A stretch of 64,000 bases of DNA from IMGVR_UViG_3300048438_000153:1-64000, one strand, 5' to 3'. Positions 2,754 through 24,859 are shown, counted from the stretch's first letter. Notes: generated by a model from the sequence alone, not told the origin. Made by a program: numbers and translations.

Positions 2754-2757
2754 AGTC

Positions 2758-4560: not shown

Positions 4561-4641
4561 TAGATGTGAGACACCATTTGTCTGTGACTGTGGACTGCCC
4601 TTAAGGGCAGAACTACCTCAGCTAACGCCCCTAGAGGAGTG

Positions 4642-4676
4642 TTACTCTTAGTTACCCATTTCGGATACCTCAACTC
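4642..4676 (-). repeat. Dispersed intergenic repeat, copy A (short form, one internal unit missing)
   Basis: Coding strand GAGTTGAGGTATCCGAAATGGGTAACTAAGAGTAA; contains the TGA stop of gene 4670-5134. Confidence 0.8.
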
Positions 4677-5134
4677 GCCCAACTCCAAGCGCGGTAGTCC
4701 TCAACGCCAACCTTGAGATACCACTGACCATTGATCGCCATGAAGACATCGCCCACTGAGAAAGTCTTAGCGGTTTCCTCATCCACGTTGTAGTCTCTCA
4801 GCACAAGAGCCCTAACCGTGTCCTCTCCCTCTGCTTTCTCGTAGAAACCACCATCGAGAATGATGCGCTCGTCAATGTCGTCAGTCAGAGCCATGAGCTT
4901 CTCCTCAAGAGACAGTCTGAGCTTATCCTCCTCCGTCTCAGGCTCTTGCTCCGAGAAATGGCAGTAGTCATCTTCAAGATAGACAGGAGGCTTGAGAGCC
5001 TTATTTGACGAAATCTCGTAAGCGCGCTCCAAGATCTCTTTCTTTTCAGGGATGGGCAAGTCACCCATAACTTCTTTCTTAAGAAGGGTCACTTGCTCTA
5101 CGGCATCTTTGAGTCGCTTGATGTAGTGGTTCAT
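4670..5134 (-). CDS. Hypothetical protein
   Basis: 154-aa ORF, AAAGGA SD, stop inside repeat copy A. Confidence 0.7.
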   Translation of the reverse strand: MNHYIKRLKDAVEQVTLLKKEVMGDLPIPEKKEILERAYEISSNKALKPPVYLEDDYCHFSEQEPETEEDKLRLSLEEKLMALTDDIDERIILDGGFYEKAEGEDTVRALVLRDYNVDEETAKTFSVGDVFMAINGQWYLKVGVEDYRAWSWAS

Positions 5135-5188
5135 AGATATTTTCCTTTAGGGGTGGTGACGTATGCCCCTCCACGATGGAGTCTTAGC

Positions 5189-5698
5189 TTAGTGGGCGAG
5201 GGAGTTTGACTTGATATACTCAAGTGTCTCTAGCGCGTAGTCATGGTTCGCTTGCCATTGTTTCAACTCCTCGTCAGAAATGATCTCCTCAATAGAGAAC
5301 TTGGAGATGATGCACTGACGACCCTCGAAGTCCGTAAGAATAAAGTCTCCGTTCTTCTTTCTCATCCAAGTGGCGCGAGCCGTGATTCCGCCTGAAGTCA
5401 CAGAGATGAACCCGTCAGAAACAGGTCTAAACTCAGTGAAGTGCGTGTGTGTCTCGGGCATCTTGAAGTCCTCAAACTCCTCTGCGTGGATGATCTCCAC
5501 AGATGTCGAGATTCGACATCCCTTAGATGCGATCTTGAGGTCTGAAGGGAGGTTGTGATGTCTCCACGTCCTAAGAACAAGACGCTGTGTCTCAGGGAAA
5601 TCATACGGATCGACGAAAGAAGTCTCGCAATACGTCTCGCGCACCATGTCTGAGTTATGTCGAACGTCTTTTTGGAATACAAGCTTGAACTCGCTCAT
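5189..5698 (-). CDS. Hypothetical protein
   Basis: 169-aa ORF, AGGAG SD preceded by hairpin gagccc-tctttag-gggctc and repeat copy B. Confidence 0.75.
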   Translation of the reverse strand: MSEFKLVFQKDVRHNSDMVRETYCETSFVDPYDFPETQRLVLRTWRHHNLPSDLKIASKGCRISTSVEIIHAEEFEDFKMPETHTHFTEFRPVSDGFISVTSGGITARATWMRKKNGDFILTDFEGRQCIISKFSIEEIISDEELKQWQANHDYALETLEYIKSNSLAH

Positions 5699-5733
5699 GT
5701 CTTTTCTCCTGAGCCCTCTTTAGGGGCTCTGTC

Positions 5734-5784
5734 TAGTGATTACTCTTAGTTACCCAATCCTGTTACCTCACCAATACCTCAACT
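5734..5784 (-). repeat. Dispersed intergenic repeat, copy B
   Basis: Coding strand AGTTGAGGTATTGGTGAGGTAACAGGATTGGGTAACTAAGAGTAATCACTA. Confidence 0.95.
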
Positions 5785-5795
5785 TGAAACTTTCC

Positions 5796-6302
5796 CTAAG
5801 TGCCTAGAATCTCATCCCAAAACCACATCACGCCCTCTGTATCTACCGCGCCGACGAAGGTTGTGTACGCTACGATCTTAGCCCCTTCTCCAACTAGGAT
5901 CTCATCGTCAGTGTCAATGTAGTCATGCACCTGACGCTGAGTGCTCCAACTGTTAAGAGTACGAATCATAAAGTGCTGGAGATCCTGAAGAACATCCGAC
6001 TTGGGTATCATCTCAGCGCCCAAGATCTGATAAAACTCAGCTCCGTTGTTCTTTTCCCCAATGAGGCAGAAATGAACGGCAAAGCATCCCTCAACACCCT
6101 CTTCAGAGTGAACCTTCAAGTGAGATCTTTTGAGCGCCCCTGATCGTCTTAGGTCATGATTGAAGCACCTACCATCAAAGAACTCCCGATCCTCGGGGCG
6201 AGAGTTGCCTAAGTCGATGATCAACTCTGTAGCTACGGCCTTGATTGATTGGAAAGTAGGTGGAAGCCCGCTGACGTCGATTCGCTTTAGTGTTCCCATC
6301 AT
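5796..6302 (-). CDS. Hypothetical protein
   Basis: 168-aa ORF with GAGG SD, downstream of repeat copy C. Confidence 0.7.
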   Translation of the reverse strand: MMGTLKRIDVSGLPPTFQSIKAVATELIIDLGNSRPEDREFFDGRCFNHDLRRSGALKRSHLKVHSEEGVEGCFAVHFCLIGEKNNGAEFYQILGAEMIPKSDVLQDLQHFMIRTLNSWSTQRQVHDYIDTDDEILVGEGAKIVAYTTFVGAVDTEGVMWFWDEILGT

Positions 6303-6328
6303 TGTTAGTTACCTCTCTGAAGTGGTGT

Positions 6329-6373
6329 TTACTCTTACTCTCTCAATCCTGTTACCTCACCAATACCTCAACT
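6329..6373 (-). repeat. Dispersed intergenic repeat, copy C
   Basis: Coding strand AGTTGAGGTATTGGTGAGGTAACAGGATTGAGAGAGTAAGAGTAA; contains the TGA stop of gene 6368-6571. Confidence 0.95.
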
Positions 6374-6571
6374 TGAAACTTTCCCTAAGTTCCTAGAATC
6401 TCTTCTTATCGAAGATTGATTTCTTTGATCATAGCTTTCGCAGGGGCATCTGCGCCCATAAAACTCTTCGTACACTTCGCATGAAGAGGGTTGTGAGGGG
6501 TGTTGATGAAAACGCTCGCTGTTATCAGCTAACCGTTGCTCTTCACAATCCGAGAAACTCTGAGAGCTCAT
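6368..6571 (-). CDS. Small hypothetical protein
   Basis: 67 aa, strong AAGGAGG SD, ATGA overlap with the upstream gene. Confidence 0.55.
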   Translation of the reverse strand: MSSQSFSDCEEQRLADNSERFHQHPSQPSSCEVYEEFYGRRCPCESYDQRNQSSIRRDSRNLGKVSS

Positions 6572-6888
6572 TGAGAAACCTCCTTAGAGCTGTACGGCAA
6601 GCTCTCCCAACCCGACTGTGCCACCACCACTGTTCCGTAGAAAGAGGGGAAATGCTCGTTGCGAGGGAGGGGGATCAAGCGCGCCTCTTCATGAACGAGA
6701 TATGACTCGTTACTCTGAGTGTCGAAATGAATGAGCTCCCATGAGGGAAACACCCTCTCAAGATCTCGTGAGTGGATCTCCTCAACTGCTTGGAAGCCCT
6801 TGCCCCCGATCAAGTGCTGAATGTCGTTGAAACACTTAACTTCGCGTGTCTCCATTGCTGAGTTTGTTGGATAAACTTTTACTTTCAT
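6568..6888 (-). CDS. DUF3846-like phage protein
   Basis: YLVHEEARLIPLPRN...FYGTVVVA resembles the DUF3846 motif (VxEEGxLxxLPxN...GxVxV); AAGGAG SD. Confidence 0.55.
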   Translation of the reverse strand: MKVKVYPTNSAMETREVKCFNDIQHLIGGKGFQAVEEIHSRDLERVFPSWELIHFDTQSNESYLVHEEARLIPLPRNEHFPSFYGTVVVAQSGWESLPYSSKEVSQ

Positions 6889-6962
6889 GTATCTCTTTCT
6901 CCTTGCCCACTAGTCAGGGGCGTAATATCGGGTTAGTCTTAATATATCGTAAAGGTAGCTCT

Positions 6963-7592
6963 TCAAGAGCCAATAACGTCAAGCCAAGAATAAAACTCTC
7001 TGTGCTTGACGGTGACATCTTCACCGTCAAGAAGGGTTTCTTTCTTGTACTCAATAGTCTCGAAGCCGAGTGAACACATTCTCTTAACCTCTCTTTCTCC
7101 GTAAATGAGGTTTCCATCATCATCCTCAGATGTAATGACGAGAAGACTCTCACCCTCTGTGGTTGAGGTTAAGAGAATCCTGTTAACGAGTCGCTGAGCG
7201 ACCTCAAGACCCAAGATAGGGAGATCAACCTCCCTCAAATGATCTACCGAGCCGAGATTCTCAACGATCACCTGACCAAAAACAGGACTTCGATCTCCCT
7301 TTGAGGGGAAGAAAGAGAAGAGAACCTCTGCCCAAACCTCTGAAGGTTTGTCTCCACCTAAGTTTAAGTAACAACTGAGCCAGAGATCAGATAAATCAGC
7401 GCGCTGAGAAAAGACATTTTCCACCTCATCCCTCACACCCATTGCTCTTAAAGCTTTACGAATGCATTCAGTGAGTGCGTTTGATCTAGATAGGGAGATC
7501 TCTTGATACTCGGGTCGATCTCTATACTTTGTGGCATGAAAGTCTGAGTCATTTACCTCAAGCTCCCCTGTGTGATCACACTTAACGTACAT
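6963..7592 (-). CDS. Hypothetical protein
   Basis: 209-aa ORF with AAAGGA SD. Confidence 0.65.
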   Translation of the reverse strand: MYVKCDHTGELEVNDSDFHATKYRDRPEYQEISLSRSNALTECIRKALRAMGVRDEVENVFSQRADLSDLWLSCYLNLGGDKPSEVWAEVLFSFFPSKGDRSPVFGQVIVENLGSVDHLREVDLPILGLEVAQRLVNRILLTSTTEGESLLVITSEDDDGNLIYGEREVKRMCSLGFETIEYKKETLLDGEDVTVKHREFYSWLDVIGS

Positions 7593-7604
7593 AATAGTCC
7601 TTTC

Positions 7605-8186
7605 TCACATATAGGGCTTTAAGATAGGGAAGCCTCCCTCCCAATCATCAATCACCGAGAATGATTTCTCGCGCTCCATGAAGTCCTGAGCAACTTTCTT
7701 AGCGTCAAACTCCACTCCGAAATACTCCCAACCGTCAGGGATGACTCCCAACACACAGTCTGAGAGGTTATCTTCTCTCGGAAGCGACTCTCCATCCTCC
7801 ATAAAGGCGGTTAACTGCTCTATTGTGTACTCGTTCGTAGTAAGAGTCACATCAATCAGCTTCCCATCGAGCGTCAGCCAAGCATGATGGATAGGGATGC
7901 CCCCTTTTCGACAGAAAAAACCCTCACAATACTTAAGACGCTCGCCTAACTGAGAGGAACTCATCAGGCTCATGTACTGCGCGTTGAAGAAACACTGCTT
8001 CGCTTGCGGTTCAAAAGCGATGCACATCGTCTCCACGAGGTCTTGCTGTTCCTCTGTCAGACACTCTGAGTGAGTAAATGCTTTTCCATTGTCTGTCAGA
8101 TATCTCGCCATAGGGTCTTTGTGACCCATCATCTCCGCGCTCTCTGCTCGAAACTTCAAATAGCTCTCTACCCCGTTGATTTCCAT
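7605..8186 (-). CDS. Putative transglutaminase/papain-like fold protein (Cys-His-Asp)
   Basis: KQCFFNA...YCEG...PIHHAW...LIDVT. Start refined to MEINGVES at 8186 (GAGGGG SD) because the longer call runs through repeat copy D. Confidence 0.55.
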   Translation of the reverse strand: MEINGVESYLKFRAESAEMMGHKDPMARYLTDNGKAFTHSECLTEEQQDLVETMCIAFEPQAKQCFFNAQYMSLMSSSQLGERLKYCEGFFCRKGGIPIHHAWLTLDGKLIDVTLTTNEYTIEQLTAFMEDGESLPREDNLSDCVLGVIPDGWEYFGVEFDAKKVAQDFMEREKSFSVIDDWEGGFPILKPYM

Positions 8187-8217
8187 GACTTTATCTTTCC
8201 CCTCGTATGAGGATCGC

Positions 8218-8270
8218 TTAGTGATTACTCTTACTCTCCCAATCCTGATACTCCACCAATACCTCAACTC
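8218..8270 (-). repeat. Dispersed intergenic repeat, copy D
   Basis: Coding strand GAGTTGAGGTATTGGTGGAGTATCAGGATTGGGAGAGTAAGAGTAATCACTAA; contains the TGA stop of gene 8264-8644. Confidence 0.9.
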
Positions 8271-8644
8271 AAAATCTGATCTATGTCGCTGAAAAGGTAA
8301 AAGAAGATTTCTGAGCACCTCTCAGGAGTTAAGAAATCCTTGCCGAATCGAGGGTAAAAACTAAAATACTCAAGGGATGACTCGAAAGCCCTATCTCTCA
8401 AAGAGGTCTTGTTCTTAAAGATCTCTTTCGCGAGATCCTGTGCCCCCTCAAGAGTCTCTGCCTTACTTAGCTTGAGGCGTCCCCCACAGTCGTTATAACG
8501 AATAGAAGTTAAGCTATGGAAGTTAGCTTCGATGACATAGTAAGACCCTATTTTATTAATATAGCTTCCTTGTACGACAACTCCATCAGACTTGATCTTC
8601 CACAGACGATACCCTCTGACTTTATTAAAAGTGATCTTTCCCAC
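8264..8644 (-). CDS. Hypothetical protein
   Basis: 126-aa ORF with a GTG start, downstream of repeat copy E. Confidence 0.6.
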   Translation of the reverse strand: MGKITFNKVRGYRLWKIKSDGVVVQGSYINKIGSYYVIEANFHSLTSIRYNDCGGRLKLSKAETLEGAQDLAKEIFKNKTSLRDRAFESSLEYFSFYPRFGKDFLTPERCSEIFFYLFSDIDQILS

Positions 8645-8665
8645 GTCAAACCCTTTCTAGTTGAG

Positions 8666-8713
8666 ACTCTTAGTTACTTTCCCAAACCTGTTACCTCACC
8701 AATACCTCAACTC
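8666..8713 (-). repeat. Dispersed intergenic repeat, copy E
   Basis: Coding strand GAGTTGAGGTATTGGTGAGGTAACAGGTTTGGGAAAGTAACTAAGAGT; contains the TGA stop of gene 8707-8916. Confidence 0.9.
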
Positions 8714-8916
8714 AACCTCCTCTGATTCTCTAGCCAAAGACGCGCCGAGTGAGAGAGATCCACCACATCCACTCGGTTCACTCCAATAACCTTTCTTTCT
8801 GTTACAGCCTCCGCGTCCCTCTCCGCTAAGAGCCTCAGACTATATGCCCGACTAACTCTCCCAATGTGCGCCGAGTCTATAGGCTGACCCGTTAATCTGT
8901 CTTGTAAGTAGTACAC
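8707..8916 (-). CDS. Small hypothetical protein
   Basis: 69-aa ORF with a GTG start, first gene of the leftward array. Confidence 0.5.
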   Translation of the reverse strand: MYYLQDRLTGQPIDSAHIGRVSRAYSLRLLAERDAEAVTERKVIGVNRVDVVDLSHSARLWLENQRRLS

Positions 8917-9188
8917 ATTCTCTCTCTTTCTTTCTTAATAAGCCCTACTCTCTTCCCATGCCCTATAAAGACTACACAAAATCACCGCTGTATCCAAAAA
9001 CCCTCCCTTGAAATCAAAACGAAAGATTCTTAAATACTTATCTGTCTCCACTCAGGGGGGGAACCTCACTTAACCCTATAAAATCCCCATCTAACTCTCT
9101 CTTGTAGTGCGATGCGGAGGGTATAACCTAGAAGACTTTCTTAAAGTAGGGACACTAGACAACAAAACACAGTGAAAGAGAGGGATGT

Positions 9189-9770
9189 ATGCCAACACCG
9201 TTAGAGTTGGAGAGTAGTGTAAGGGCAAGCGACCCTACGGGTATCTTTCTCAGTCCTATGGGTGGGCTTAAGTTGAAGGGTATTTGTGTGGGTATCTCTA
9301 CATGGTTGAGGGTGGGCTATACAGTGAGTTCTTTCTCTGTGGGTTCAGGGGGGGTGGGTGCTTGTCAGGGTAGTCTCTTTCTTAATGTGGGGGGGGCATC
9401 TTCTCTTATGTTGAGGAGTCTAACAGGGACAGGACAGATGAGTGGTTTACTTGTATCGTCTTATGCTTCTGCACTAGGAAATGGGATAGCGAGTCTACCT
9501 TATCTTATTAGCGGTGTGAGTCCTTCAGTGGGGGTAGGTACATTCACAGTGACGGGTGGTGTGGGAGAGCCTATTAGTTTAGTGGGTGCTCTTCAGAGTG
9601 GATTAGTGAGTGTGGGTTATAATGGAGTGGTGTCATCTTTGGAGATAGGCGGTATTTCTGAGGGTGTAGTGAGTTTATTTACTGTGGGAGTGAGTGGAAC
9701 AGGCGGAGTGGTAGGCACACCTAGTCCGTCGGGTTTATCTGCACCTAATGCGCCATTGTTTGTGCTTTAA
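9189..9770 (+). CDS. Gly/Ser/Val-rich probable virion (baseplate-region) protein
   Basis: 193 aa, GAGGG SD, co-oriented directly upstream of the 2884-aa protein. Confidence 0.6.
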   Translation: MPTPLELESSVRASDPTGIFLSPMGGLKLKGICVGISTWLRVGYTVSSFSVGSGGVGACQGSLFLNVGGASSLMLRSLTGTGQMSGLLVSSYASALGNGIASLPYLISGVSPSVGVGTFTVTGGVGEPISLVGALQSGLVSVGYNGVVSSLEIGGISEGVVSLFTVGVSGTGGVVGTPSPSGLSAPNAPLFVL

Positions 9771-9779
9771 GGAAAAGAC

Positions 9780-12700
9780 ATGAAAGAGATCATATTAGAC
9801 GCGAGGTCAAGTAACCGTAATGACACCTCTACAGGGTTAGCTCTACGAGAAGTCTTAGACAGGGGGGCTTATGTAGGGGGCTTACGAGGAGACTTGATGT
9901 TTCTTTCTGAGGGTAACGGAAAGATCATTGATCGTGATGTTTCCGTAAGCGAGTTGGGTGAGGGTTCTTTCTTAGAGGTTCGTGGTGGTGATGTTCTTTA
10001 TGGTGGGGTGAGGGGATTGAGTGAGGGAGACTATGTGAAGAGGGGCGTAGTTCTTTCTTGGACTCGTAATGACACAGAGCGCGTAAGATTTAGCGGAGAC
10101 TTTGATTTATTGGGAGGGGGAAACCGCTTGTCATTGGGTGTAGTGGGAGGTGATTTAGCTAGGTTGGTTTCTTTCTCTGAGGGTGTGGAGTTACGCATAG
10201 GGGGGGATGGTTTAGACGATAGCGAGTGGTCATCGAAGATTGGGGGTGGCGAGATTGTTTTCACGGATGGGGAGTTGGGTGAGTATGTGTTCTTGGGAGA
10301 TGAGAAAGTAGTGTATGGAGGAGACGGAAGTCTTAGGATAAAGGAGGGTGAGTTTGATGAGGGCTTAGAGGTTTGGTTTGTGGGGGTGGAGCTTTTGGGA
10401 GTGGAGGTGTTGGGAGTGGATTCAGGAGAGGCTTTTCTTTCTCCTGTACCTTATGTGTATGAGCACATTTATTTGAGGGTAGGCTCAGAGGGTCACATAG
10501 GCTCAGAGCAGATGACGTATTGTTATTCTGACGCGGAGTGTAGGGGGTTAGATTTAGGGGAGTACGGAGTGGCTTTGAGTCTCTCTAGTGGGCTATTGAG
10601 GTTTGGTTCTAGTTACGAGGGTAAAGAGATCAGGTATGAGGGATTACTCTTAGGTAGGTGTGGTGAGTTAGTCTCTGAGCAAGTGGTGACGAATGGAGGT
10701 TTAGTGAGCGAGGGAGATATTCTTTCTACGGGTGTGGACAGTGTATCGGGAGAGCTTGTTGGTTTAGGTTATGGGAGTGTGTTTCTTAATGTAGGGGGGG
10801 TGTCATTATTGCCTGTGGTTTCGGGGGACAAGGTGAGGTCGGGAGACAGGGCTTATTTCGGTAGTGATGGGCGCATTAGATTGAAGCGTGGGGTTGAGTT
10901 ATTGGGTCAGGTTCGAGGCACAGGTATTTTGAAGTTGGTTCAGAGTTTCTTTCCTTGTCGCATGGAGAGGGTGGGTGTGTCACAGAAGAAAGTGTTGGGT
11001 CTTGATGGGAGTGTGGACTTAGCGAGTGGTGGTGTGGTGAGCTACACGCCTGATGGAGTTGTGACAGGAAACGGTGTGATATCTCCCTCGGGTCATTTAG
11101 TCTTAGGAGATGGGGAGGACTTCGCGAGCTATGATGAGTCTTTGGGTGCAGTGCCTTTGGGTCTAGGTACAGGAGTTGTGTTAGCTCTTAGGGGCGAGGG
11201 TGTGAATGGCTTTAGAGAGCTTGAGGATTTCATTGTTTCTGACGGCTTGAGGTCGGGGAGTACTTTCTCTTTCTTAGACTTTGTTCCGCGCACTGACTTT
11301 AGTGGTTATGGCGTGGGGTCTAACTATTTCAAAGCGGGTGAAGAGGTCTTGAAGCTCGGGGAGGACTTGGAGTATGACTTCGCTGACAGGAGAGCGCCGA
11401 AGGTAGGTTGGATAGAGGGGCGTACTCGTGCTTCAGAGTTAAAGAACCCGACTTCTTTCTTTCAGTTGGAATCGGGTGTTGTTGTGGGCTCGACCTCGAT
11501 CAAGCTCTCTAGTGGTACGAGCGTGGAGGTCTTAACAGAGGGCTTAGACTATGACTTACCCTTTGAGGCTCAGGGGGGCTTTGCGCGTCAGATCGCTGAG
11601 TTAGGTGGAGAGCGCACTAGGGGCTATAAGAGCGTCAAGGTGAGTGACACTGAGGCGATTCTTTCTGACTTGGTTTTAGAGCCTTCGGTGGGCAACTACC
11701 TTGTCTATGAGGGAGACTCTCTTTACAGGGAGGTTCTTTCTTTCTTAAAGGAGGAGAGTGGTGGTCATCGTGTAGAGTTGAGCAGTGGTTCTATCTATGA
11801 CCTGAGAGGAAACGAGACTGTGGGAGACTTAACAGGAGGTTGGGTCTTATACGAGGGGGTGTTAGGGGATGTCTCGGGTGGTGAAGTGAACCTCATGAGA
11901 GTCAACGATGAGTGTTTCGTGGACTTGCCCCTCTCTGACGAGCCTTTCTTGAGGGTCTACAAGACGTATTCAGCGAGTACAGCTCAGGAGGTGGGCTTAG
12001 TCTTATCTAAGGTGAGTCCAAAGAGTGTTCTTTCTGCTCGTCTTGAGGGTGGTTCAGATGTACCTCTCGTTGTTCTTTCTAATGAGGTATTGCCTAATAG
12101 AGTCATGGATGTCTCTTCGGCACATTACGTGAGCGGAGACTATAAAATCTTAGTAGACGGTGTAGAGAACACTTCTTTTTCAGTGGGCGCTGAGGGTTTG
12201 ATTTCTTTCTCACCTGTGATTGATGACTTAAGCGAGGTAGTTTTTCAGCCTCAGCCGAGATCTCTTGAGACTCAAGTTGAGTACCTGAACGGAGTGATGG
12301 GTTCATCTCTCCCTGTGGTAAAAGTCTTAGAGGAGCTCGTGGACACTGAGTATCGGGTTCAGCCGATCACAGGGGTTATTTCTTTCTCACAGCCTTTAGA
12401 CGAGGCTGTTGGCGTGGAGGTCTTGTATACTCCCGTAGACCCTGAGACTCAGGAGGCTCTTTCTCAGAAGAGAGAGACGATTTTGTTTGTCAAGACGCTT
12501 GAGACGTGTACTCGCGTTAGTGACAGGCTTTTTACTTTCTCTGAGAGCGCATACTTGGATATCACGCCACAGGTGTATGTGGACGTCTTAGAAGCATCAG
12601 GTGTGGTAGTCAGAGATGGCGAGATCGAGTTTGTCTTTGACGTGGCTGAGTCTGCGACGGTAGCTATTTCTTATGTGAGGGAGGGATCACTTGGCGGTGA

Positions 12701-18434: not shown

Positions 18435-18618
18435 GTGGAAAGCACCTACAGACAACCCTAAGTATCCTGATCAGATCTCGGAGATGATTTCTAATCTTAA
18501 GAAAGTCACTGAGATGCTTGAGGGTCAGATCAGACAGGACGAAGCCTCTATTAAGCGACTTGAGCTTGAGATGAAAAAGTTCGAGGCGCAGAGAAAGAAA
18601 GGAGGCGGTAATGGCTGA
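18427..18618 (+). CDS. Small coiled-coil protein
   Basis: 63 aa with heptad pattern; overlaps both neighbours. Confidence 0.65.
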   Translation: MSEWKAPTDNPKYPDQISEMISNLKKVTEMLEGQIRQDEASIKRLELEMKKFEAQRKKGGGNG

Positions 18619-21121
18619 TTTAAAGGCGCTCCCACCACCAACATGGGTTGATATCGTTGACTCAGACAAAGCGAACAAGTGGATTGACGACAATGTAAAG
18701 CCGATTCAAGAAGCGATTGATGGGGCGTATGTTTTCCTCATCTCGATATTTGAAACCCTCTCTAAAGGGCTCGATTTTGTCTCCTCTCTTGTGACAGATG
18801 TCGCCGACCCTATTTCTTTGATTCTTAAAAAGATCATTGAGGTCATCGAGACTCTCCTTAAAGACCTGAGAAACGCAGGTTTTTACATCACTTGGGACAG
18901 TGCTTTCAAGACGCTCCCGAACTTCTCGAAATTCAGAGGAGGTTACGGTCGCGTTTCTTCTGATCTGACAAAAAAGCTCACCGACCCTCAAGATACGAGC
19001 CGACCTCAGTTTAGCCCTCTCACTTCTGTGATTACGCTTACGGCTTATGCGGATTTGGGTGTAACAGGCGCGGGCTTTGACGCGAAGGATTTCGCTCAGA
19101 AAGGAAAGACAGGTTTTTCTGCGCTTGATGCTTTTCTTAATCTTTTCAGCGTGACGAGAACATCCTCAAATTACCTCCCTCCTCTCTTGCTGAAGCCTGT
19201 TCTCTTTGCGGAGAACAGCGACGGCGATGCCTACGCACTTGATTCAAACCTAATCAATGCAGACACAAACATCGCGGGATTCTCGGCGGTATGGCAGAAC
19301 CCTCCCTCTAAGAAACTTAACTTCTTTGACGTTGACCTTCCACCAGGGTCGTATGTTGTCACTGTCACAACGCGAGCTAATCCTCTCGACCTGTATGTTG
19401 AACTACCCTTAGAGAGAACCTCATCGCCATCTGATAGTGTCTCTACTGTAATATCTCCTGTTTACTTTCAGAAAGAAAAACAGGGTGAGTTTACGGGTCA
19501 CGCTACTACGCTTGTCGCGCCCCGAATCAGAGATGTGTCAGACTCTCTGTTTGTGAAATATAATGGCGAGAAAGTGTCGTATACCAAGTTCGCTGAAGAG
19601 ACTAAGAGTTTCTATTACCATACATTCAATGTTGGAGTGGTCTTTGGGAGCTCAGAATACAACCTCGACCTCAAGTTTGATGAGCTTCCTACCAAGCTGT
19701 ACGATCTCGATAAAGGGGAGTACACAGAGAACATAGAGACGTACTATATCTATGTTTCTTCACACACAGATGAAGTGAAGGCTTACCGCGATAAGTCTGA
19801 AGTGACTCTCGGAGAAACGAGCGGAACTGACCTAGACTATGTGCTGACAAAGGATGAGGGCGCGAACTACCTCTCAACCTCTTCAGGTAAGCCACCTCCT
19901 CCGTTCAGTAAACCCTCAAGCGCAAGTAGGAAATCCTCTGAAAAGATCAAGTTTGTAAGGGCGCTCAGGGAGAGTCTCTTAATGTTCATGCTAGCTGAAG
20001 AGTACTTTCATAAGTCTCCATCCAACCCTCTAGGTATTTCTAGAGTGACGGACTCAGATCGGGCTAAGATTTACTCCGTGTTTTGGGCGAAGGACGCCAA
20101 GTCTCTCTACGACAAGTATGATCATGATCGAGATGACGTGAATAGCTTTAGAGATGAGTTAGAAGATGAAGTGAAAGACGCGGTGACTACCTTTCTAGGT
20201 CGAGGCACACCGTCGAAGAAAGTCCTCAGCTCTTTCGAGAGCGATATTGACACAATCTTAAGTGAAGATGACTTCCCTCTGATCTATCCCACGCTTGATC
20301 TAGAGTATAGAGAAGAGGATGACTTTGAGTCTCAATATGGTCTCTTTCCTGACAGGTATTTAGGGCTGTCGGAGAGGTTAGATAAAGAGGATAAAGTCCA
20401 AGATTTTCTTAGCGACCGTAGGGATAATATAGTCCTACCTTTACAGAGCTTCGGAGACACCGACTGTTCTTTCTTCTACAGGGAGGGAGAAAAGGCTGAG
20501 AGTATGCCTTCTCTGTTATTTAACAACTCTTTCTTACAAGAAAAGTATTTGGCCTCTGTTAGACTGTTGGGTTTGACCCTAACCGAGCCCGACCACGCTT
20601 CTGCCCAAGGAGAATGGATCTTCCTAAGACTTCTTGCAGATGGACTCCCCTCAGTAGAGCAGTTCTTGGAGTCCATTCTCGCGGCGGTCAAGTCATTGTC
20701 CGACGGCATTAATGGGATCATTGACGCCATAAAAAGATACATCGCGCTCTTACAGCAGAGGATTGCTTCTATCAGAGCTTTTGTTACTCGGCTCAAGAGA
20801 CTCTTAGATGCAATTCTTTCTATTCGACTGCCTAGTGGACTTCGTTATCTCTTAGCAGAGGCAGATGGGACTGAGGGTCTTATTTCTGCCTTCAGAGGCG
20901 CTGAGAACCAACCGCCTTCAGGAGAGCTTGTCTATAGTACATATGCAACCTTTGTGTTTGGAGGTTTACCCTCTATCTTTGTTGACTTTCTTCTTTCTCT
21001 TATCTCCGACCAATCAACGATAGATCAGGTGAATGAGGTGTTCACAGGAAACAAAGACGGGGAGACAGACAATCAGATCTTCTTAGGGGTTGGAAATGAA
21101 GGTGGGGGGGGTCAATCATGA
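18611..21121 (+). CDS. Probable virion structural protein with N- and C-terminal amphipathic helical segments
   Basis: 836 aa, AGGAGG SD, in the same operon as the 2884-aa protein. Confidence 0.7.
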   Translation: MADLKALPPPTWVDIVDSDKANKWIDDNVKPIQEAIDGAYVFLISIFETLSKGLDFVSSLVTDVADPISLILKKIIEVIETLLKDLRNAGFYITWDSAFKTLPNFSKFRGGYGRVSSDLTKKLTDPQDTSRPQFSPLTSVITLTAYADLGVTGAGFDAKDFAQKGKTGFSALDAFLNLFSVTRTSSNYLPPLLLKPVLFAENSDGDAYALDSNLINADTNIAGFSAVWQNPPSKKLNFFDVDLPPGSYVVTVTTRANPLDLYVELPLERTSSPSDSVSTVISPVYFQKEKQGEFTGHATTLVAPRIRDVSDSLFVKYNGEKVSYTKFAEETKSFYYHTFNVGVVFGSSEYNLDLKFDELPTKLYDLDKGEYTENIETYYIYVSSHTDEVKAYRDKSEVTLGETSGTDLDYVLTKDEGANYLSTSSGKPPPPFSKPSSASRKSSEKIKFVRALRESLLMFMLAEEYFHKSPSNPLGISRVTDSDRAKIYSVFWAKDAKSLYDKYDHDRDDVNSFRDELEDEVKDAVTTFLGRGTPSKKVLSSFESDIDTILSEDDFPLIYPTLDLEYREEDDFESQYGLFPDRYLGLSERLDKEDKVQDFLSDRRDNIVLPLQSFGDTDCSFFYREGEKAESMPSLLFNNSFLQEKYLASVRLLGLTLTEPDHASAQGEWIFLRLLADGLPSVEQFLESILAAVKSLSDGINGIIDAIKRYIALLQQRIASIRAFVTRLKRLLDAILSIRLPSGLRYLLAEADGTEGLISAFRGAENQPPSGELVYSTYATFVFGGLPSIFVDFLLSLISDQSTIDQVNEVFTGNKDGETDNQIFLGVGNEGGGGQS

Positions 21122-21978
21122 GCTTTCAGTGGTCAGTCTTATTTCGTGAAGGATCGTGGCGCGACTTCAGGGACTTCGCGCTCAATCAAAGAAAGAACGT
21201 GCAGGCTAGGTTCGACACTATCAACTATGAGCTTGAGCGCATAGGTCGAGTCTCTGTCGTCTATAAGAGGCAAGATCCCGACGACTCTTTTTCACGCATG
21301 ACAGAGAGAAGGATTGGGGTCAGAATAAAGACCAACACAAGCCTCTCTAAGCTCCTCAGAGCGTATGTCGCTCAAGGCGGTAACTACTTTGACATTTCTA
21401 TGTTTCTCAAGCCCGATTCTTACGAAGAAGTAGAGGACGAGGAGGGCAACGTGAGGAGGAAAGAGTTCCAACCCTACACGGGTGTCATCGCGCCCGCGAG
21501 TGGAGATGTGATTTCTGATAAGATTGATCTCACAGGTGTCACAGACATTTGGAAAGACCCTACTCGTAAACTAGGTGACAAGGGTTCTATATGGGAAGAG
21601 GACTCTACCAAGCTCGTAGGCGACCGCGTATTAGCGATGCAAGGGTGGATATCTCAGGAAATCAAGCAACTGAGAAATGACCTTGAAGCGCGGATCATCA
21701 AGCTCTGCGATCTCAGGGAACAATTAATCTTAGAAAGAGATGAGATCATCATTTCTGCGATAGGGGGCTCGGTGGCTGATACTGAGTTTAATCCTGAAGC
21801 TACCTTAGAAGACCTCCACGTCTCCAAAATTGTATATGCCTTTGATACTGACTTCTATGAGGTGAAAGAGGACGGAACTCCCGACTTCACTAAGCCAAGA
21901 TCTGGGCGCGGTGTGAAGCAGTTCTTAAACCTTTTGGAAGATGCCCCTACAGGGGAAGAGAAATACACAACACTGTGA
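21118..21978 (+). CDS. Hypothetical (probable virion) protein
   Basis: 286 aa with ATGA overlap. Confidence 0.7.
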   Translation: MSFQWSVLFREGSWRDFRDFALNQRKNVQARFDTINYELERIGRVSVVYKRQDPDDSFSRMTERRIGVRIKTNTSLSKLLRAYVAQGGNYFDISMFLKPDSYEEVEDEEGNVRRKEFQPYTGVIAPASGDVISDKIDLTGVTDIWKDPTRKLGDKGSIWEEDSTKLVGDRVLAMQGWISQEIKQLRNDLEARIIKLCDLREQLILERDEIIISAIGGSVADTEFNPEATLEDLHVSKIVYAFDTDFYEVKEDGTPDFTKPRSGRGVKQFLNLLEDAPTGEEKYTTL

Positions 21979-21985
21979 GGTAAAC

Positions 21986-23284
21986 ATGAGAAAGACAGCG
22001 TATGAATATGGGTTGATGACCCTCGAAGAATTCTTAGATCACAGAAATCCAGGCGGTAAGACACATGAGAGTGGGTCTTATTCTTTCTCTGTAGACTCGA
22101 TGAATCAAGACTACTCAATCGTCGGGTACAGGATGGTTGAAGAGAGAAAGAGCGAGTACACCGTCTATGGTAAGAGTGACAAGTCGGCTTTCTTCTTCTG
22201 TAAAAACTACAAAATCAAAGCAGTCATCGCTAAGGGCGTGATCTATTACACCTATACGAGAGAGAAGAATCATATTCTCAGCCGTCCCCTCACAAGAGGT
22301 GTGCATTATGGCTACATCTACCCTCGTGACATGGGCTTGAGAGAAAAGAAAGTAAAGTACCCTGAAGACTACATGGGATTAGTCTCGGACATCGTAGAGA
22401 TGAACACTAGAAGATACCCTCATCTCCTTGAGAGGTTTGAGAATGACGGCGAATGCTTCTCTGTTAGGAGTGAAGAACCGCTCGTAGGCAAGAATCAGGG
22501 AGTCTCTATCGGCATCTTTAATGAGTCAGGCTACAAGGTCGCTACAGCACAAGATGAATGGGGGGCAACCTTAATCGGTGTGGCTCGCGAATATCGAAGC
22601 CGAGGGTTCAGCAAAGTCGTCTCTCGTTATTGGCTTCAGTATAACCCTGACAAGAAGTCAGGGGGGATGACTCCCGCAGGGCATAACGCGGCGGTCAGCT
22701 TTTGGGCTGACACCGTGAGAAAGATGCACTCAGAGGGAGTGTACGAAGAGAGGATTCTTAGTGGGGAGATCACTCAGGATAGAGTAGATGAAATCCTTGA
22801 AGCTCTCCCTCCGAAAGAAGTCAGAAAGATCGAGCGAGAAAGAACGATAGAGCCCACAGGTGAACTCCTCATGTTAGAGGGAGACTTTTCTTTCGTCGTC
22901 TACGATAAGTCTTTCTTAGTCGAGCAAGACGATAGGTTCATCTATGGGTATGGACTCTTGAGAGACAGTAGCGACGTAGGTGATTTTTTCTTTCAGTTAG
23001 ACTATGACAGAAAGTACGATGATACGGTGACTCGTATCGCGCTTCAATTCGCTAAGAATCGAGACAATAACCCACTCTATGATGGTCAAGGTGATCACTA
23101 CAGTGACCTCCTTGAAGTAGAGGGCATCTCAGAGATCAGAAGAGAAGGCGAGTACCTCTACATAGAAAGAGATTTAGTAGACTACTCTCCGCTCGTATAT
23201 CGAGATAAGATTTACAGAGGTCGCATCGACAAGTACGATGAGATGAAGCTTAACCTAGAAGAAAGAGCAGTCGCCAAGTGGTGA
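21986..23284 (+). CDS. GNAT acetyltransferase-like domain protein with an MRKTA N-terminus
   Basis: ATLIGVAREYRSRGFSK (motif A-like VxxxYRxRG) and SGGMTPAG. Start refined to the ATG at 21986 (GAGG SD). Confidence 0.6.
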   Translation: MRKTAYEYGLMTLEEFLDHRNPGGKTHESGSYSFSVDSMNQDYSIVGYRMVEERKSEYTVYGKSDKSAFFFCKNYKIKAVIAKGVIYYTYTREKNHILSRPLTRGVHYGYIYPRDMGLREKKVKYPEDYMGLVSDIVEMNTRRYPHLLERFENDGECFSVRSEEPLVGKNQGVSIGIFNESGYKVATAQDEWGATLIGVAREYRSRGFSKVVSRYWLQYNPDKKSGGMTPAGHNAAVSFWADTVRKMHSEGVYEERILSGEITQDRVDEILEALPPKEVRKIERERTIEPTGELLMLEGDFSFVVYDKSFLVEQDDRFIYGYGLLRDSSDVGDFFFQLDYDRKYDDTVTRIALQFAKNRDNNPLYDGQGDHYSDLLEVEGISEIRREGEYLYIERDLVDYSPLVYRDKIYRGRIDKYDEMKLNLEERAVAKW

Positions 23285-23303
23285 CTGTAAAAAGGAAACT
23301 CTT

Positions 23304-23525
23304 ATGCTAAAGCAAGATGACATTAGGATGCTCTCGGTGATTGGCGAGATGCCTGAACTCACAATCACGGAAGTGAAGAGAGAGTGGAGAGCTCGCTCGG
23401 GTCGAACTGACGCGGAGGCAGTTCTCAACAACCTCAATGCGAGAGGTCTTATTCTTATCGAAAGAGAGCTAGACGCAATCTTGATCTCTTCTAAGGGCGC
23501 GACCTATATCAAGAGGGGCTCTTAA
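23304..23525 (+). CDS. Small winged-helix-like protein
   Basis: 73 aa, AAGGA SD, LNNLNARGLILIER...ISSKG wing pattern. Confidence 0.6.
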   Translation: MLKQDDIRMLSVIGEMPELTITEVKREWRARSGRTDAEAVLNNLNARGLILIERELDAILISSKGATYIKRGS

Positions 23526-23794
23526 AGCTCAGCGAGGTCGAGAAACTCTTTCGACACAAATATGGGCGTGTGATCTCCGTAATACGCGCCCTGTACGTTA
23601 TACTCGAACCACTCAACCGCCTTGAGGTGAGCCTCTTCTTCTGAAGTCTCCTCATCTGAGAACTCTTCTTTCCAATGTGATATGAGCGCGTCTTGGTCAT
23701 AAGCGAGCACTGCGTTGTGATTAACGCGGGCGATTCCTATGATCATCGGGTCAAAGGCTTCTCTCGGCTCTAGAAACACTAGATTATCTTCCAT
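23522..23794 (-). CDS. Conserved phage protein of unknown function
   Basis: FDPMIIGI...LAYDQD...EEEA...EWFEYNVQGAYYGDHTPIFV matches a recalled widespread phage hypothetical pattern; GAGG SD. Confidence 0.7.
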   Translation of the reverse strand: MEDNLVFLEPREAFDPMIIGIARVNHNAVLAYDQDALISHWKEEFSDEETSEEEAHLKAVEWFEYNVQGAYYGDHTPIFVSKEFLDLAEL

Positions 23795-23881
23795 AACTCA
23801 GACCTCTTTACTATATGATGTATAGTGGGTGAGCGCGGTGCTTACCCTTACTAATCTTAGTACCGATTGAGGAGCATGGAA

Positions 23882-24184
23882 ATGGGAAAGACTCTTTGGG
23901 GGTTCGACAAGGAATGTCTAGCTATGGGTCGCTTACACAACTACCTGTCAAACGTCGATGGTATCGACGCTGAGAAAGTAGGTCGCGTGATGGCTTGGGC
24001 TCGCGAGGTGTTCGATAAGGATCAGCTTTACACGAAAGAAATAAAGCTGACTATCGAAACACTCTTAACATCAGGTTCAGATGAGGACAAAGAGTTCGCT
24101 CAGTATGCTAAAGACGCAGTTGAGAAAGACAACTTCGGCATCTTGAGAATGCCCCGAGATTACCGTATGAGGTATCGACGCTGA
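23882..24184 (+). CDS. Hypothetical protein
   Basis: GAGGAG SD 7 nt upstream of the ATG at 23882. Confidence 0.65.
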   Translation: MGKTLWGFDKECLAMGRLHNYLSNVDGIDAEKVGRVMAWAREVFDKDQLYTKEIKLTIETLLTSGSDEDKEFAQYAKDAVEKDNFGILRMPRDYRMRYRR

Positions 24185-24189
24185 TTACC

Positions 24190-24236
24190 TTGAGGTATTG
24201 GTGAGGTATCAGGATTGGGTGACTAAGGGTAATCAT
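24190..24236 (+). repeat. Dispersed intergenic repeat, copy F (opposite orientation, still on the coding strand)
   Basis: TTGAGGTATTGGTGAGGTATCAGGATTGGGTGACTAAGGGTAATCA lies between a stop at 24184 and the AGGAG SD of the next gene. Confidence 0.95.
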
Positions 24237-24256: not shown

Positions 24257-24859
24257 ATGGGCGCAAAGAGATACTACTACGATAAACTAAGTCACTGCAA
24301 AGATTGGATTATTTGGACAGACCCCTTCACATATCGCCTCATTAGGCTAATGAGTGGGGAGATGCCTTGTGGCATACAGACCTCATGCGGAAGTCGCACT
24401 TACATCTTCAATGGGGAACATTCGTTCACAATGACTAACTCGGCGTATGGGATGTATAACTGTTCAGAGTCTTACTCTGAAAAGAAGATGTACGAGATGC
24501 TGACCTCTTGGTGTCGTAAGGAATGTCACATAAGGGATGGCTTAGACGAAAAGATCAAGTGGTGTCTCCAAGCGCCTGATGACCTGTATGACAAGCTCAT
24601 GCGTTTTCCGAGAGACTACACTCAATGCGAGCTGAGAACCGCTTGTCTTAACAATGATCGACATCATGAGGTTGGAGTAGCCAAGTTTTGGGGGGCAGAC
24701 CAACAATCAGTTGAGGTCAATGGTAACCTTCTTTACTTAAGCCTAAAAGGTTATCGGGAGAACACTAGAAAAACCTTAGAAAACGTCTACTTGTCTAAGA
24801 CAAGAGGATCTATGTATCAGACTTTTAGATACTCCGCTCATAAGATCACTAGGCTTTAG
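24257..24859 (+). CDS. Hypothetical protein
   Basis: 200 aa, AGGAG SD, preceded by repeat copy F. Confidence 0.7.
   Translation: MGAKRYYYDKLSHCKDWIIWTDPFTYRLIRLMSGEMPCGIQTSCGSRTYIFNGEHSFTMTNSAYGMYNCSESYSEKKMYEMLTSWCRKECHIRDGLDEKIKWCLQAPDDLYDKLMRFPRDYTQCELRTACLNNDRHHEVGVAKFWGADQQSVEVNGNLLYLSLKGYRENTRKTLENVYLSKTRGSMYQTFRYSAHKITRL

What the first reader, a model, noticed from the sequence alone, without database searches (positions are those of the whole stretch)
4642..24236. ~47-bp G-rich intergenic repeat that separates accessory genes and supplies their stop codons (cassette- or PeSL-like element)
Seen: six copies (4642-4676, 5734-5784, 6329-6373, 8218-8270, 8666-8713 on minus; 24190-24236 on plus), always on the coding strand between one small gene and the RBS of the next. 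Consensus is TTGAGGTATTGGTGAGGTAACAGGATTGGGTAACTAAGAGTAATCA. In four copies the same TGA in the repeat is the stop codon of the upstream gene (4670, 6368, 8264, 8707). It has internal GTA-centred units spaced 11, 13 and 10 bp apart, and copy A lacks one unit. Copies B and D are followed by small RBS-proximal hairpins. I found no canonical sigma70 or sigma54 match. Established analogues are the PeSL early-promoter/stem-loop elements that shuffle gene cassettes in T4-like phages, and integron attC sites. Inference: a phage-specific promoter or operator that also serves as a recombination junction for accessory genes.
Basis: partly seen in the sequence, partly recalled or inferred. Interest (0 to 1): 0.72.

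Follow-up and report, generated by a model that had tools for sequence, protein, structure and literature searches.

The report
Repeated promoter-like cassette junction in phage
An uncultured ~286-kb marine jumbo phage places the same ~46-bp G-rich sequence in front of at least 23 small accessory genes; it looks like a non-standard promoter, and related strains gain, lose or swap genes right at its edges, much as T4-like phages do at their PeSL elements.

Summary
The family is larger than reported. The 275-kb record holds 11 copies. A second contig of the same phage bridges the record's two ends with 10.8 kb that holds about 12 more copies of a second subtype. The invariant core is TTGAGGTATTGGTG-N6-CAG-N3-TGGG.

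Every copy points at the adjacent gene, 10-75 nt before its start codon. This includes two back-to-back divergent pairs. In the second subtype a covarying RNA hairpin starts right after the motif, followed by the ribosome-binding site. Sigma-70-consensus promoters are depleted in the region. No phage RNA polymerase, sigma region 2 or integrase was found, and the motif has no hairpin.

Related marine strains (78-97% identity) differ by whole-gene indels and replacements that end at motif edges.

My best reading is a phage-specific, non-sigma-70-consensus promoter cassette that also serves as a recombination junction. It works like PeSL but is not a PeSL, and it is not attC. No transcription start was mapped, and what recognises the motif is unknown. 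Novelty: new variant of a known kind.

The parts
4639..4673 (-). Motif copy A. It is 11 nt shorter than the others. Its TGA (4670-4672) is the stop of ORF 4670..5134. A ~255-nt ORF-free stretch follows.
   Evidence: nhmmer E = 5e-11
5736..5782 (-). Motif copy B, the closest to the consensus. It sits upstream of gene 5189..5698.
   Evidence: E = 1.7e-19
5711..5729 (-). Leader hairpin GAGCCC-CTAAAGA-GGGCTC between copy B and the AGGAG ribosome-binding site and ATG at 5698.
   Evidence: read from the sequence
6325..6371 (-). Motif copy C. Its TGA (6368-6370) is the stop of the 67-aa ORF 6368..6571. It sits upstream of gene 5796..6302.
   Evidence: the 67-aa gene is absent in relatives L142 and L147, and the deletion ends exactly at AG|TTGAGG
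6325..6405 (-). 81-nt duplicate (91% identical) of 5736-5816. It comprises motif C plus the 35 nt upstream of it and copies the B junction. This is a footprint of recombination through the motif.
   Evidence: (family D1)
8221..8267 (-). Motif copy D. Its TGA (8264-8266) is the stop of ORF 8264..8644. It sits upstream of gene 7605..8186, whose ATG is at 8184-8186.
8660..8710 (-). Motif copy E, with a 4-nt insertion in its 3' part. Its TGA (8707-8709) is the stop of ORF 8707..8916. It sits upstream of gene 8264..8644.
8264..8644 (-). Variable cassette slot between E and D. This record holds a 126-aa gene X. Relative L121 holds an unrelated gene Y instead, and L147 holds Y plus X.
24190..24236 (+). 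Motif copy F, the only plus-strand copy in the record. It lies 21 nt before gene 24257..24859.
   Evidence: In relatives L155 and L159 homology to this record begins exactly at 24190, and L155 carries an extra [motif + 243-aa gene] unit.
1..68 (+). 3' part of a gap-type leader (hairpin, AGAAAGG, ATG at 66). Its motif copy lies just outside the record's first base, on the bridging contig.
29440..30243 (+). Protein of 267 aa with five tandem Myb / sigma-70-region-4-like helix-turn-helix repeats. It is a candidate DNA-binding factor only; no link to the motif has been shown.
   Evidence: Sigma70_r4_2 47.5 bits, Myb 35-39 bits, above cut-offs

Best explanation
The repeat is the core of a phage-specific transcription-initiation cassette. 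It has an invariant upstream block (TTGAGGTATTGGTG), a CAG..TGGG block about 10-13 nt before the inferred start site, and a subtype-specific 3' block. After these come the 5' leader (often a hairpin), the ribosome-binding site and the start codon of one accessory gene. About two dozen near-identical copies are packed into one ~36-kb block of ORFan genes, plus one outlier, F. The copies give the phage's recombination system short patches of homology at gene boundaries. Crossovers in or at the edge of the motif delete, insert or swap genes while keeping each gene attached to a working promoter. The motif's stop codons, present in all three frames, terminate whatever ORF ends up upstream.

Shown: the copy number, orientation, position, conservation, leader hairpin covariation and strain-to-strain gene differences bounded by the motif.

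Inferred: promoter activity, the start site near motif positions 36-45, and recognition by host RNA polymerase with a non-primary or phage-supplied specificity factor.
For: 1. There are 11 copies in the record and about 12 in the 10.8-kb bridging segment, with none elsewhere in 275 kb.
2. Every copy is co-oriented with the next ORF and lies 10-75 nt before its start. This includes five or six copies on the opposite strand and two divergent back-to-back pairs, 226 and 167 nt apart, where each direction needs its own promoter. Several of these ORFs are real genes: AAA_5 ATPase, VWA, TrAA12-like, and an N6-adenine methyltransferase.
3. Across 41 distinct copies from this phage and its relatives, positions 1-16, 19, 21-23 and 27-30 are nearly invariant while the flanks are not.
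4. In the second subtype a hairpin starts at motif position 40 and ends just before AGAAAGG and ATG. Its stem covaries (GUCAG..CUGAC, GUGAG..CUCAC, GUAGAG..CUCUAC), with 117 of 153 cells paired in the best register against 74-90 in the others. A start site, if the motif is the promoter, must therefore lie at or before position 39.
5. Sigma-70 consensus sites are depleted (2 against 8.4 expected, none on the coding strand).
6. A different, extended -10-like motif (TTCTGATAT) sits before replication genes, so the G-rich motif looks like a separate promoter class.
7. In relatives the E-D slot holds X, Y, or Y+X. The 67-aa gene before C is an indel ending exactly at the motif edge. The F locus has three arrangements, with homology beginning at motif position 1. 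L147's copy E carries the upstream module of the other subtype.
8. The 81-nt B/C duplication and four-gamete incompatibility at 7 of 10 site pairs fit exchange between copies.
9. The motif's TGA ends upstream ORFs in at least 10 distinct junctions across strains, and one ORF in L121 reads right through the motif.
Against: No transcription start was mapped. The three RNA runs gave one small contig each, and one of them (6220-6447) crosses copy C whole, which shows read-through or DNA carry-over. The sequence fits no promoter consensus that I could test. No phage RNA polymerase, sigma region 2 or NADFDGD motif was found, so the reader of the motif is unidentified. The subtype in the bridging segment also carries an upstream ACAGATTCCTA element that could be the real promoter there. 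Copy A precedes no ORF. Whole-gene indels must end in intergenic DNA in any case, and 3-4 indels near the tRNAs have no motif. No more distant relative carrying the motif was found.
Confidence: 0.6

Rival explanations
1. The motif is an operator only. In this view it is an oriented binding site for a phage DNA-binding protein, such as one of the multi-helix-turn-helix proteins, that switches the accessory block off or on or blocks elongation like mycobacteriophage stoperators. The promoters themselves lie elsewhere.
For: The conserved length (34-46 bp) is longer than a minimal promoter. TTG-type words recur at positions 1, 9 and 26. The phage encodes three proteins with 2-5 tandem sigma-region-4/Myb-like helix-turn-helix domains. 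Stoperators are likewise asymmetric, oriented with transcription and spread across intergenic sites (PMC9283540, PMC6550527). The subtype in the bridging segment has another conserved element (ACAGATTCCTA) upstream that could be the promoter.
Against: Window-type copies have no other conserved upstream element and no sigma-70 consensus site on their strand. L147's copy E has the upstream element while this record's copy E lacks it, so that element is optional. The spacing from ACAGATTCCTA to the motif varies from 15 to 28 nt. No integrase was found and I saw no other sign of lysogeny. A site can be both promoter and operator, so this rival overlaps the main explanation.
Confidence: 0.15
2. The motif is an RNA-level element. 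In this view it is transcribed within long polycistronic mRNAs and acts in the RNA as an unstructured, purine/G-rich ribosome standby or processing platform ahead of each cistron.
For: The motif is strikingly unstructured: as single-stranded DNA it folds worse than most shuffles (z +0.3 to +1.6). It contains Shine-Dalgarno-like GAGG and GGTGA words and always lies on the sense strand upstream of a ribosome-binding site. An RNA-library contig spans copy C. The adjacent leader hairpin is clearly an RNA feature.
Against: Divergent pairs in the bridging segment need promoters within 167-226 nt, and the motif copies are the only element present at every one of them. The upstream gene's stop codon often lies inside the motif, so ribosomes would cover it. 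In copy H and copy g4 the ribosome-binding site follows the TGGG block directly, leaving no room for a separate downstream promoter. Strict conservation of a 14-nt block with fixed spacing to TGGG is more typical of protein-DNA recognition.
Confidence: 0.12
3. The motif is a site-specific recombination site or selfish mobile repeat (attC-like, MITE-like or a homing target), and its link to gene starts is secondary.
For: Gene content differs between strains at motif edges. L155 has an inserted unit flanked by two copies.
Against: There are no inverted repeats and no hairpin on either strand. No tyrosine recombinase was found in the record or in the bridging contig. There are no target-site duplications. 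Copies are strictly co-oriented with genes at a fixed place relative to the ribosome-binding site. Scans of 185,579 species genomes and of IMG/VR found the motif only in this phage lineage.
Confidence: 0.05

Closest known systems
PeSL (promoter-early stem-loop) cassettes of T4-type phages (Arbiol et al. 2010, PMC2839356; Comeau et al. 2014, PMC4122927)
   Same: Both are a repeated composite intergenic element running from the upstream gene's stop codon to the downstream Shine-Dalgarno sequence and ATG. Both are concentrated in hyperplastic regions full of ORFans. Closely related phages differ by indels and replacements bounded by the element, and homologous recombination between copies is the proposed driver.
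   Different: PeSLs are defined by strong sigma-70-like -35/-10 boxes, an AT-rich upstream tract and a GGGG...CCCC stem-loop that terminates transcription. This motif is G-rich and C-poor, matches no sigma-70 consensus and contains no stem-loop. Its hairpins lie downstream in the leader, and no terminator function is evident. The phage is not detectably T4-like. Mini-circles were not tested.
Integron attC sites
   Same: Both are a repeated element at cassette boundaries, one per gene.
   Different: attC sites are imperfect inverted repeats that fold as single strands and are recombined by an IntI tyrosine recombinase, and the cassettes are usually promoterless. Here there is no fold and no integrase, and the element sits 5' of its gene like a promoter.
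Stoperators of Cluster A mycobacteriophages (PMC9283540, PMC6550527)
   Same: Both are asymmetric, oriented with transcription, present in many copies in short intergenic gaps, and often placed at gene ends.
   Different: Stoperators are 13-14 bp, spread genome-wide in temperate phages and bound by the immunity repressor. This motif is 34-46 bp and confined to one accessory block, and no repressor, integrase or lysogeny signal was found.
Promoters of group-3 sigma factors (B. subtilis SigB RGGXTTRA-N14-GGGTAT; Synechocystis SigF -32 TAGGC / -12 GGTAA within a long AG-rich tract; PMC2532724)
   Same: Both are purine/G-rich promoters lacking TATAAT. A GGGTA(A/T)-type element sits where the -10 region would be if transcription starts just before the leader hairpin. 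A GGTAT/AGG word lies upstream.
   Different: The spacing is 16-20 nt rather than 14. The second subtype has GGGAGAT, GGGTTAG or GGGAAAT instead. The host is unknown, and no such sigma gene was found in the phage. This is a resemblance only and was not tested.
Early promoters of jumbo phages with their own multisubunit RNA polymerases (AR9, phiKZ; PMC5312081, PMC7598289)
   Same: Both are a phage-specific, non-sigma-70 consensus repeated before early genes of a jumbo phage.
   Different: Those promoters are short, AT-rich and read by a virion-packaged phage RNA polymerase. No RNA polymerase subunit, T7-like polymerase or DxDGD catalytic motif was found here.

Membership tests
PeSL (T4-type promoter-early stem-loop) | Sigma-70-like -35 and -10 boxes with 16-18 nt spacing | tested here: not met
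   The consensus scan of 1-10000 found no site on the minus strand and 2 sites against 8.4 expected overall. TTGAGG matches TTGACA at 4 of 6 positions, but no TATAAT-like hexamer lies 16-18 nt downstream.
PeSL (T4-type promoter-early stem-loop) | Stem-loop (often GGGG...CCCC) within the element that acts as terminator or attenuator | tested here: not met
   The motif folds worse than shuffles. Hairpins exist only downstream in the leader. Terminator function was not testable.
PeSL (T4-type promoter-early stem-loop) | [quoted passage not shown] | tested here: met
   Ten flanking proteins have no Pfam or PHROG hit. The upstream stop codon lies inside or next to the motif, and the ribosome-binding site and ATG lie 10-75 nt downstream.
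PeSL (T4-type promoter-early stem-loop) | Indels and replacements between close relatives are bounded by the element | tested here: met
   This holds for the E-D slot, the 67-aa gene and the F locus. However, 3-4 indels near the tRNAs lack the motif.
PeSL (T4-type promoter-early stem-loop) | Excised mini-circles with chimeric elements | not testable with these tools
   This needs raw reads or inverse PCR. The single read-laying run returned assembled contigs only.
Integron attC | Imperfect inverted repeats (R''-L''/L'-R') that fold into a hairpin as single-stranded DNA | tested here: not met
   Minimum free energy was 0 to -1.9 kcal/mol and z was +0.3 to +1.6 on either strand.
Integron attC | Associated IntI-type tyrosine recombinase | tested here: not met
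   PF00589 was absent from the record and from the bridging contig, while the control rang in 14 of 14 genomes.
Stoperator (Cluster A mycobacteriophage) | 13-14-bp asymmetric site bound by an immunity repressor and distributed genome-wide in a temperate phage | tested here: not met
   The motif is 34-46 bp and is confined to about 12% of the genome plus one outlier. No integrase was found. Binding was not testable; complex prediction does not fold DNA jobs.
Sigma-54 promoter | GG-N10-GC (-24/-12) spacing | tested here: not met
   By inspection of the 41 aligned copies, there is no GC dinucleotide 10 nt after any conserved GG. The second subtype has GG-N7-GC.
Promoter of a phage-encoded RNA polymerase | A phage RNA polymerase gene is present | tested here: not met
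   PF00940 and PF00562 gave no hits (the PF00940 control also rang nowhere, so that test is weak). No N/D-x-D-x-DGD motif of the RNA-polymerase type was found in any ORF of 150 aa or more. PHROG scans of 28 large ORFs found no RNA polymerase.

The most novel reading that the evidence does not exclude
The motif defines a new promoter class for a clade of uncultured marine huge phages. The block of accessory genes would be read by host RNA polymerase redirected by something other than the primary sigma factor. That could be a host group-3-type sigma (the GGGTA-like -10 region) or a phage-delivered factor built from tandem sigma-region-4/Myb-like helix-turn-helix domains that recognises the TTGAGG-TA-TTGGTG...TTGGG words. 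The same 46 bp would then double as the homology patch that lets the phage population trade promoter-equipped genes.
Probability: 0.2. Interest if true: 0.75.

Novelty: new variant of a known kind. Interest (0 to 1): 0.58.

Why it matters
Promoter-bearing repeats that also guide gene shuffling have been worked out experimentally only in T4-type phages, where they are ordinary sigma-70 promoters. This case suggests the same evolutionary device arose in an unrelated, uncultured marine jumbo phage with a quite different, unrecognised promoter sequence. That matters in three ways:

- It gives a ready sequence tag for finding the accessory (probably host-takeover or anti-defence) genes of this lineage in metagenomes.
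- It gives a defined 46-bp probe for asking what reads it.
- It explains why assemblies of this phage break in this region: contigs end at motif copies, and the record lacks 10.8 kb of repeat-rich DNA.

Tried and rejected
**RNA evidence**
- Three RNA-library runs held only one small contig each: 5779-6359, broken at copies B and C by the assembler; 6220-6447, crossing copy C; and 7100-7352. None carries start-site information.

**Search for relatives and for the motif elsewhere**
- blastn of 4000-11900 against GenBank phages found nothing.
- The nearest GenBank record, LR745208.1 (485 kb, 44-64% amino-acid identity for polymerase and terminase), shows no motif enrichment (28 hits against 20 in the control), and its one good 12-mer lies in coding DNA.
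- IMG/VR scans found only this phage's own contigs.
- The genome-contig scan gave 6 single chance-level hits and no host candidate.
- The search for related loci with the helicase returned only the phage itself.

**Search for a reader of the motif**
- Pfam models for T7-like RNA polymerase, the beta subunit and sigma region 2, plus a DxDGD motif scan, were all negative.
- The 2884-aa ORF next to the block looks like a fibre-like structural protein, not a polymerase.
- The 845-aa ORF after copy I is an N6-adenine methyltransferase.
- Complex prediction with the five-repeat helix-turn-helix protein and copy B as double-stranded DNA was not folded by the tool and is no evidence either way.

**Ideas considered and dropped**
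- G-quadruplex: five GG tracts occur in window-type copies but only three in the second subtype, so it is not conserved.
- GTA-unit periodicity as the key feature: it is not conserved in the second subtype.
- Rfam: there was no match other than two tRNAs in 1-30000.
- The apparent 'joints' in the DNA run are just other motif copies (K and G) aligning to B and C, not deletions.

Full report
**1. What the window is**

The window is the first 64 kb of a 275,102-bp IMG/VR virus record with 47.5% G+C and an estimated completeness of 88%. About 19 seawater metagenomes hold it.

PHROG hits identify a tailed jumbo phage: DNA polymerase, DnaB-like and other helicases, ribonucleotide reductase, large terminase, portal, baseplate wedge and tail fibres. 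Most large ORFs, and all ten small ORFs tested around the repeat, have no Pfam or PHROG match. The nearest GenBank record is an uncultured 485-kb 'huge phage', LR745208.1, at 44-64% amino-acid identity.

**2.

A profile built from the copies finds exactly 11 in the record, with E from 1e-9 to 1e-19 and the next hit at E = 0.7:
- Five lie on the minus strand at 4.6-8.7 kb.
- Five lie on the minus strand at 266.8-274.2 kb.
- One lies on the plus strand at 24,190.

A second contig of the same phage (100% identical, 84 kb) joins the record's base 1 to its base 275,102 through 10,818 bp that the record lacks. The two minus-strand groups are therefore one continuous block of about 36 kb, and the full genome is about 286 kb.

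The missing segment holds about 12 further copies of a second subtype, TTGAGGTATTGGTGAGAAAGCAGAAATGGG..TAAGGTGTGAG. Assemblies break at the copies: DNA contigs in run X1 end inside copies B, C and E.

Across 41 distinct copies from this phage and its relatives, the conserved positions are 1-16 (TTGAGGTATTGGTGAG), 19 (A), 21-23 (CAG), 27-30 (TGGG) and 33 (A). Positions 7-13 served as the search anchor, so their invariance is partly by construction. The 3' block is subtype-specific: TAAGAGTAAY(C)AC or TAAGGTGTSAG.

**3. Anatomy**

Every copy lies on the sense strand of the next ORF, with its 3' end 10-75 nt before the start codon. In the bridging segment five or six copies are on the other strand, and each still points at its own gene. 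Two pairs stand back to back, 226 and 167 nt apart, at divergent genes. Genes there include an AAA_5 (MoxR-like) ATPase, a VWA protein and a TrAA12-like protein. The 845-aa gene after copy I has N6-adenine methyltransferase motifs.

In the second subtype the motif is followed at position 40 by a hairpin that ends just before AGAAAGG-N8-ATG. The stem covaries between copies (GUCAGGGG/CCCCUGAC, GUGAGAGG/CCUCCUCAC, GUAGAGAGG/CUCUUCUCUAC, GUAAAGGGG/CCCUCUUUAC). In the best register 117 of 153 cells pair, against 74-90 in the other registers. Copies B and D have shorter hairpins before their ribosome-binding sites.

The motif itself is almost free of C and does not fold; it folds worse than most shuffles on either strand. 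It carries stop codons in all three frames within its first 21 nt: TGA at 2-4, TGA at 13-15, and TAA at 19-21 in the GGTAAC copies. The TGA at 2-4 ends the upstream ORF in four window copies and in at least six junctions in relatives. In relative L121 one ORF reads through the whole motif.

**4. What it most likely does**

One copy per gene, strict co-orientation, divergent pairs and a leader hairpin plus ribosome-binding site directly downstream form the layout of a promoter cassette.

A sigma-70 consensus scan of 1-10000 finds 2 sites against 8.4 expected, and none on the strand that carries all the genes. The motif is thus the only recurrent candidate signal there.

If transcription starts just before the hairpin (positions ~36-39), TGGG sits at about -13 to -10 and TTGAGG at about -39 to -34. 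That is the geometry of a sigma-70-family promoter whose -35-like word matches TTGACA at 4 of 6 positions but whose -10 region is not TATAAT-like. In copies H and g4 the ribosome-binding site follows the TGGG block directly, so positions 1-34 must suffice.

A different motif, TTCTGATAT (TGn-TAT, extended -10-like), occurs nine times 40-55 nt before replication and nucleotide-metabolism genes. The phage therefore appears to have at least two promoter classes, and the second class suggests its host has a conventional primary sigma.

I found no phage RNA polymerase (PF00940, PF00562 and a DxDGD scan were all negative), no sigma region 2 and no integrase.

The phage does encode three proteins made of 2-5 tandem sigma-region-4/Myb-like helix-turn-helix domains, at 29440-30243, 239605-240174(-) and 243025-243510(-). 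The motif's core contains TTG-type words at positions 1, 9 and 26. Any link between these proteins and the motif is a hypothesis only.

The GGGTA(A/T) word at the inferred -10 region recalls promoters of group-3 sigma factors: SigB has RGGXTTRA-N14-GGGTAT, and Synechocystis SigF has -32 TAGGC and -12 GGTAA in a long AG-rich tract (PMC2532724). The spacing differs, however, and the second subtype departs from that word.

**5. Comparative evidence for a recombination junction**

A metagenome scan with the core pattern returned eight contigs from related strains at 78-97% identity.

- **Slot between E and D.** L147 has E-Y-X-D. This record has E-X-D, with the junction just 3' of E. L121 has E-Y-D, with Y shortened by about 12 codons and fused exactly to TTGAGG of D. 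The flanks are 78-92% identical.
- **Upstream of C.** The 67-aa gene 6368-6571 is present only in this record. In L142 and L147 the deletion ends exactly at AG|TTGAGG. In this record the last 35 nt of that gene plus motif C duplicate the 35 nt upstream of B plus motif B (81 nt, 91% identical), so its C-terminus is read from a copied junction in another frame.
- **F locus.** This record has geneP-F-gene(24257..24859). L155 has geneQ-motif-geneR(243 aa)-motif-same gene. L159 has a different left flank, then geneQ'-motif-same gene. Homology to this record begins exactly at 24190 in both relatives.
- **Copy E in L147.** It carries the ACAGATTCCTA...GGTAGCT module typical of the second subtype, so that copy is a mosaic.
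- **Within the record.** Among ten copies, 7 of 10 informative site pairs show all four haplotypes.

Several caveats apply. Indels of whole genes must end between genes in any case. Three or four indels around the tRNAs at 25-27 kb have no motif. No circles or deletion junctions could be sought in raw reads.

**6. Comparison with known systems**

In function this is closest to the PeSL cassettes of T4-type phages. These are repeated elements running from stop codon through promoter to Shine-Dalgarno sequence and ATG, located in hyperplastic ORFan regions, and recombination between them inserts, deletes and swaps genes (PMC2839356, PMC4122927). This motif is not a member of that family, because the defining sigma-70 boxes, AT-rich tract and internal terminator stem-loop are absent.

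It is not an attC site, since it has no fold and no integrase. It differs from stoperators in length, distribution and phage lifestyle (PMC9283540). It differs from the AT-rich promoters of jumbo phages that carry their own polymerases (PMC5312081, PMC7598289).

**7. Verdict**

The cassette-junction role has direct comparative support. The promoter role has strong architectural support but no experimental support. The attC analogy is rejected, and the PeSL analogy holds for function, not for membership.

The element is a new variant of a known kind. The main open question is what recognises the motif.

Noticed in passing
beyond window base 1: locus L081 28-10845 (the bridging contig, = G001:3724-14541): The record lacks 10.8 kb of repeat-rich DNA between its two ends. 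That segment holds about 12 more motif copies in both orientations, each with a ~70-nt conserved leader, plus genes for a MoxR-like AAA_5 ATPase, a VWA protein and a TrAA12-like protein.
   Followed up: yes
L081 (e.g. comp 13151-, 13313+, 14699+, 19925+, 21785+); also G000:274917(-) and relative L147 upstream of its copy E: A second repeated element, (C)TTACAGATTCCTAT, often followed by a G run, lies 15-28 nt upstream of the second-subtype motif copies. It is partly palindromic (ACAG..CTGT) in some copies and could be an activator or repressor site, or another promoter.
   Followed up: partly
window 28422-28430(+); G000 82040, 84531, 86200, 96137, 254549 (+); 219403, 212854, 209565 (-): TTCTGATAT (TGn-TAT, extended -10-like) occurs nine times, 40-55 nt upstream of helicase, DnaB-like, DNA polymerase, Dda/exonuclease-like and other genes. 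It probably marks a separate (middle?) promoter class.
   Followed up: partly
window 4384-4638 (-): A ~255-nt ORF-free stretch follows copy A and contains a T-arm-like GGGTTCGACTCCCC. ARAGORN and Rfam find nothing, and the fold z-score is -1.97. It could be a small RNA or a tRNA remnant driven by copy A.
   Followed up: partly
window ~3700-8705 in DNA run X1: The short contigs between motif copies have word depth 30-36, against 17.5-18.2 for the long flanking contigs. This is roughly 2x and might reflect a collapsed terminal repeat or a strain mixture.
   Followed up: no
window 5779-6359 in run X20 (labelled RNA?): All 18 listed differences from the window are C>T on the plus strand (G>A on the coding strand) and are clustered, for example at 5846-5852. 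This one-directional pattern is odd for strain variation.
   Followed up: no
window 29440-30243(+); G000 239605-240174(-); G000 243025-243510(-): Three proteins are built of 5, 2 and 3 tandem helix-turn-helix domains that match Sigma70_r4/r4_2, Myb and HTH_23 models. The first also has a weak GcrA-like hit.
   Followed up: partly
G000 270807-273344(-): The 845-aa gene directly after motif copy I has N6-adenine DNA methyltransferase motifs (DCCAGTGN, NPPY). It is a plausible early self-protection function.
   Followed up: partly
genome-wide intergenic regions, e.g. window 8938(-), 28351(-): The most enriched intergenic words are TTAAGAAAGA and AGAAAGG just before start codons. This is a purine-rich ribosome-binding signal that would pair with a 16S 3' end of the ...CCUCCUUUCU type, which may be a clue to the host.
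   Followed up: no
window 3578-3743 and 31017-31099: Coding tandem repeats occur here: 12-nt CTTCAACCTGAG units plus a 69-nt duplication, and 21-nt CCTGAGTCTCCTACAGAAGAG units. The other assembly of this phage breaks at 3723.
   Followed up: no
window 24935-25198(-) and 25215-25586(-); also 27248-27324: Paralogous small minus-strand genes share a conserved 60-nt N-terminal coding segment. The same segment marks rearranged genes in relatives L155 and L159, in a tRNA-flanked variable region that lacks the G-rich motif.
   Followed up: partly
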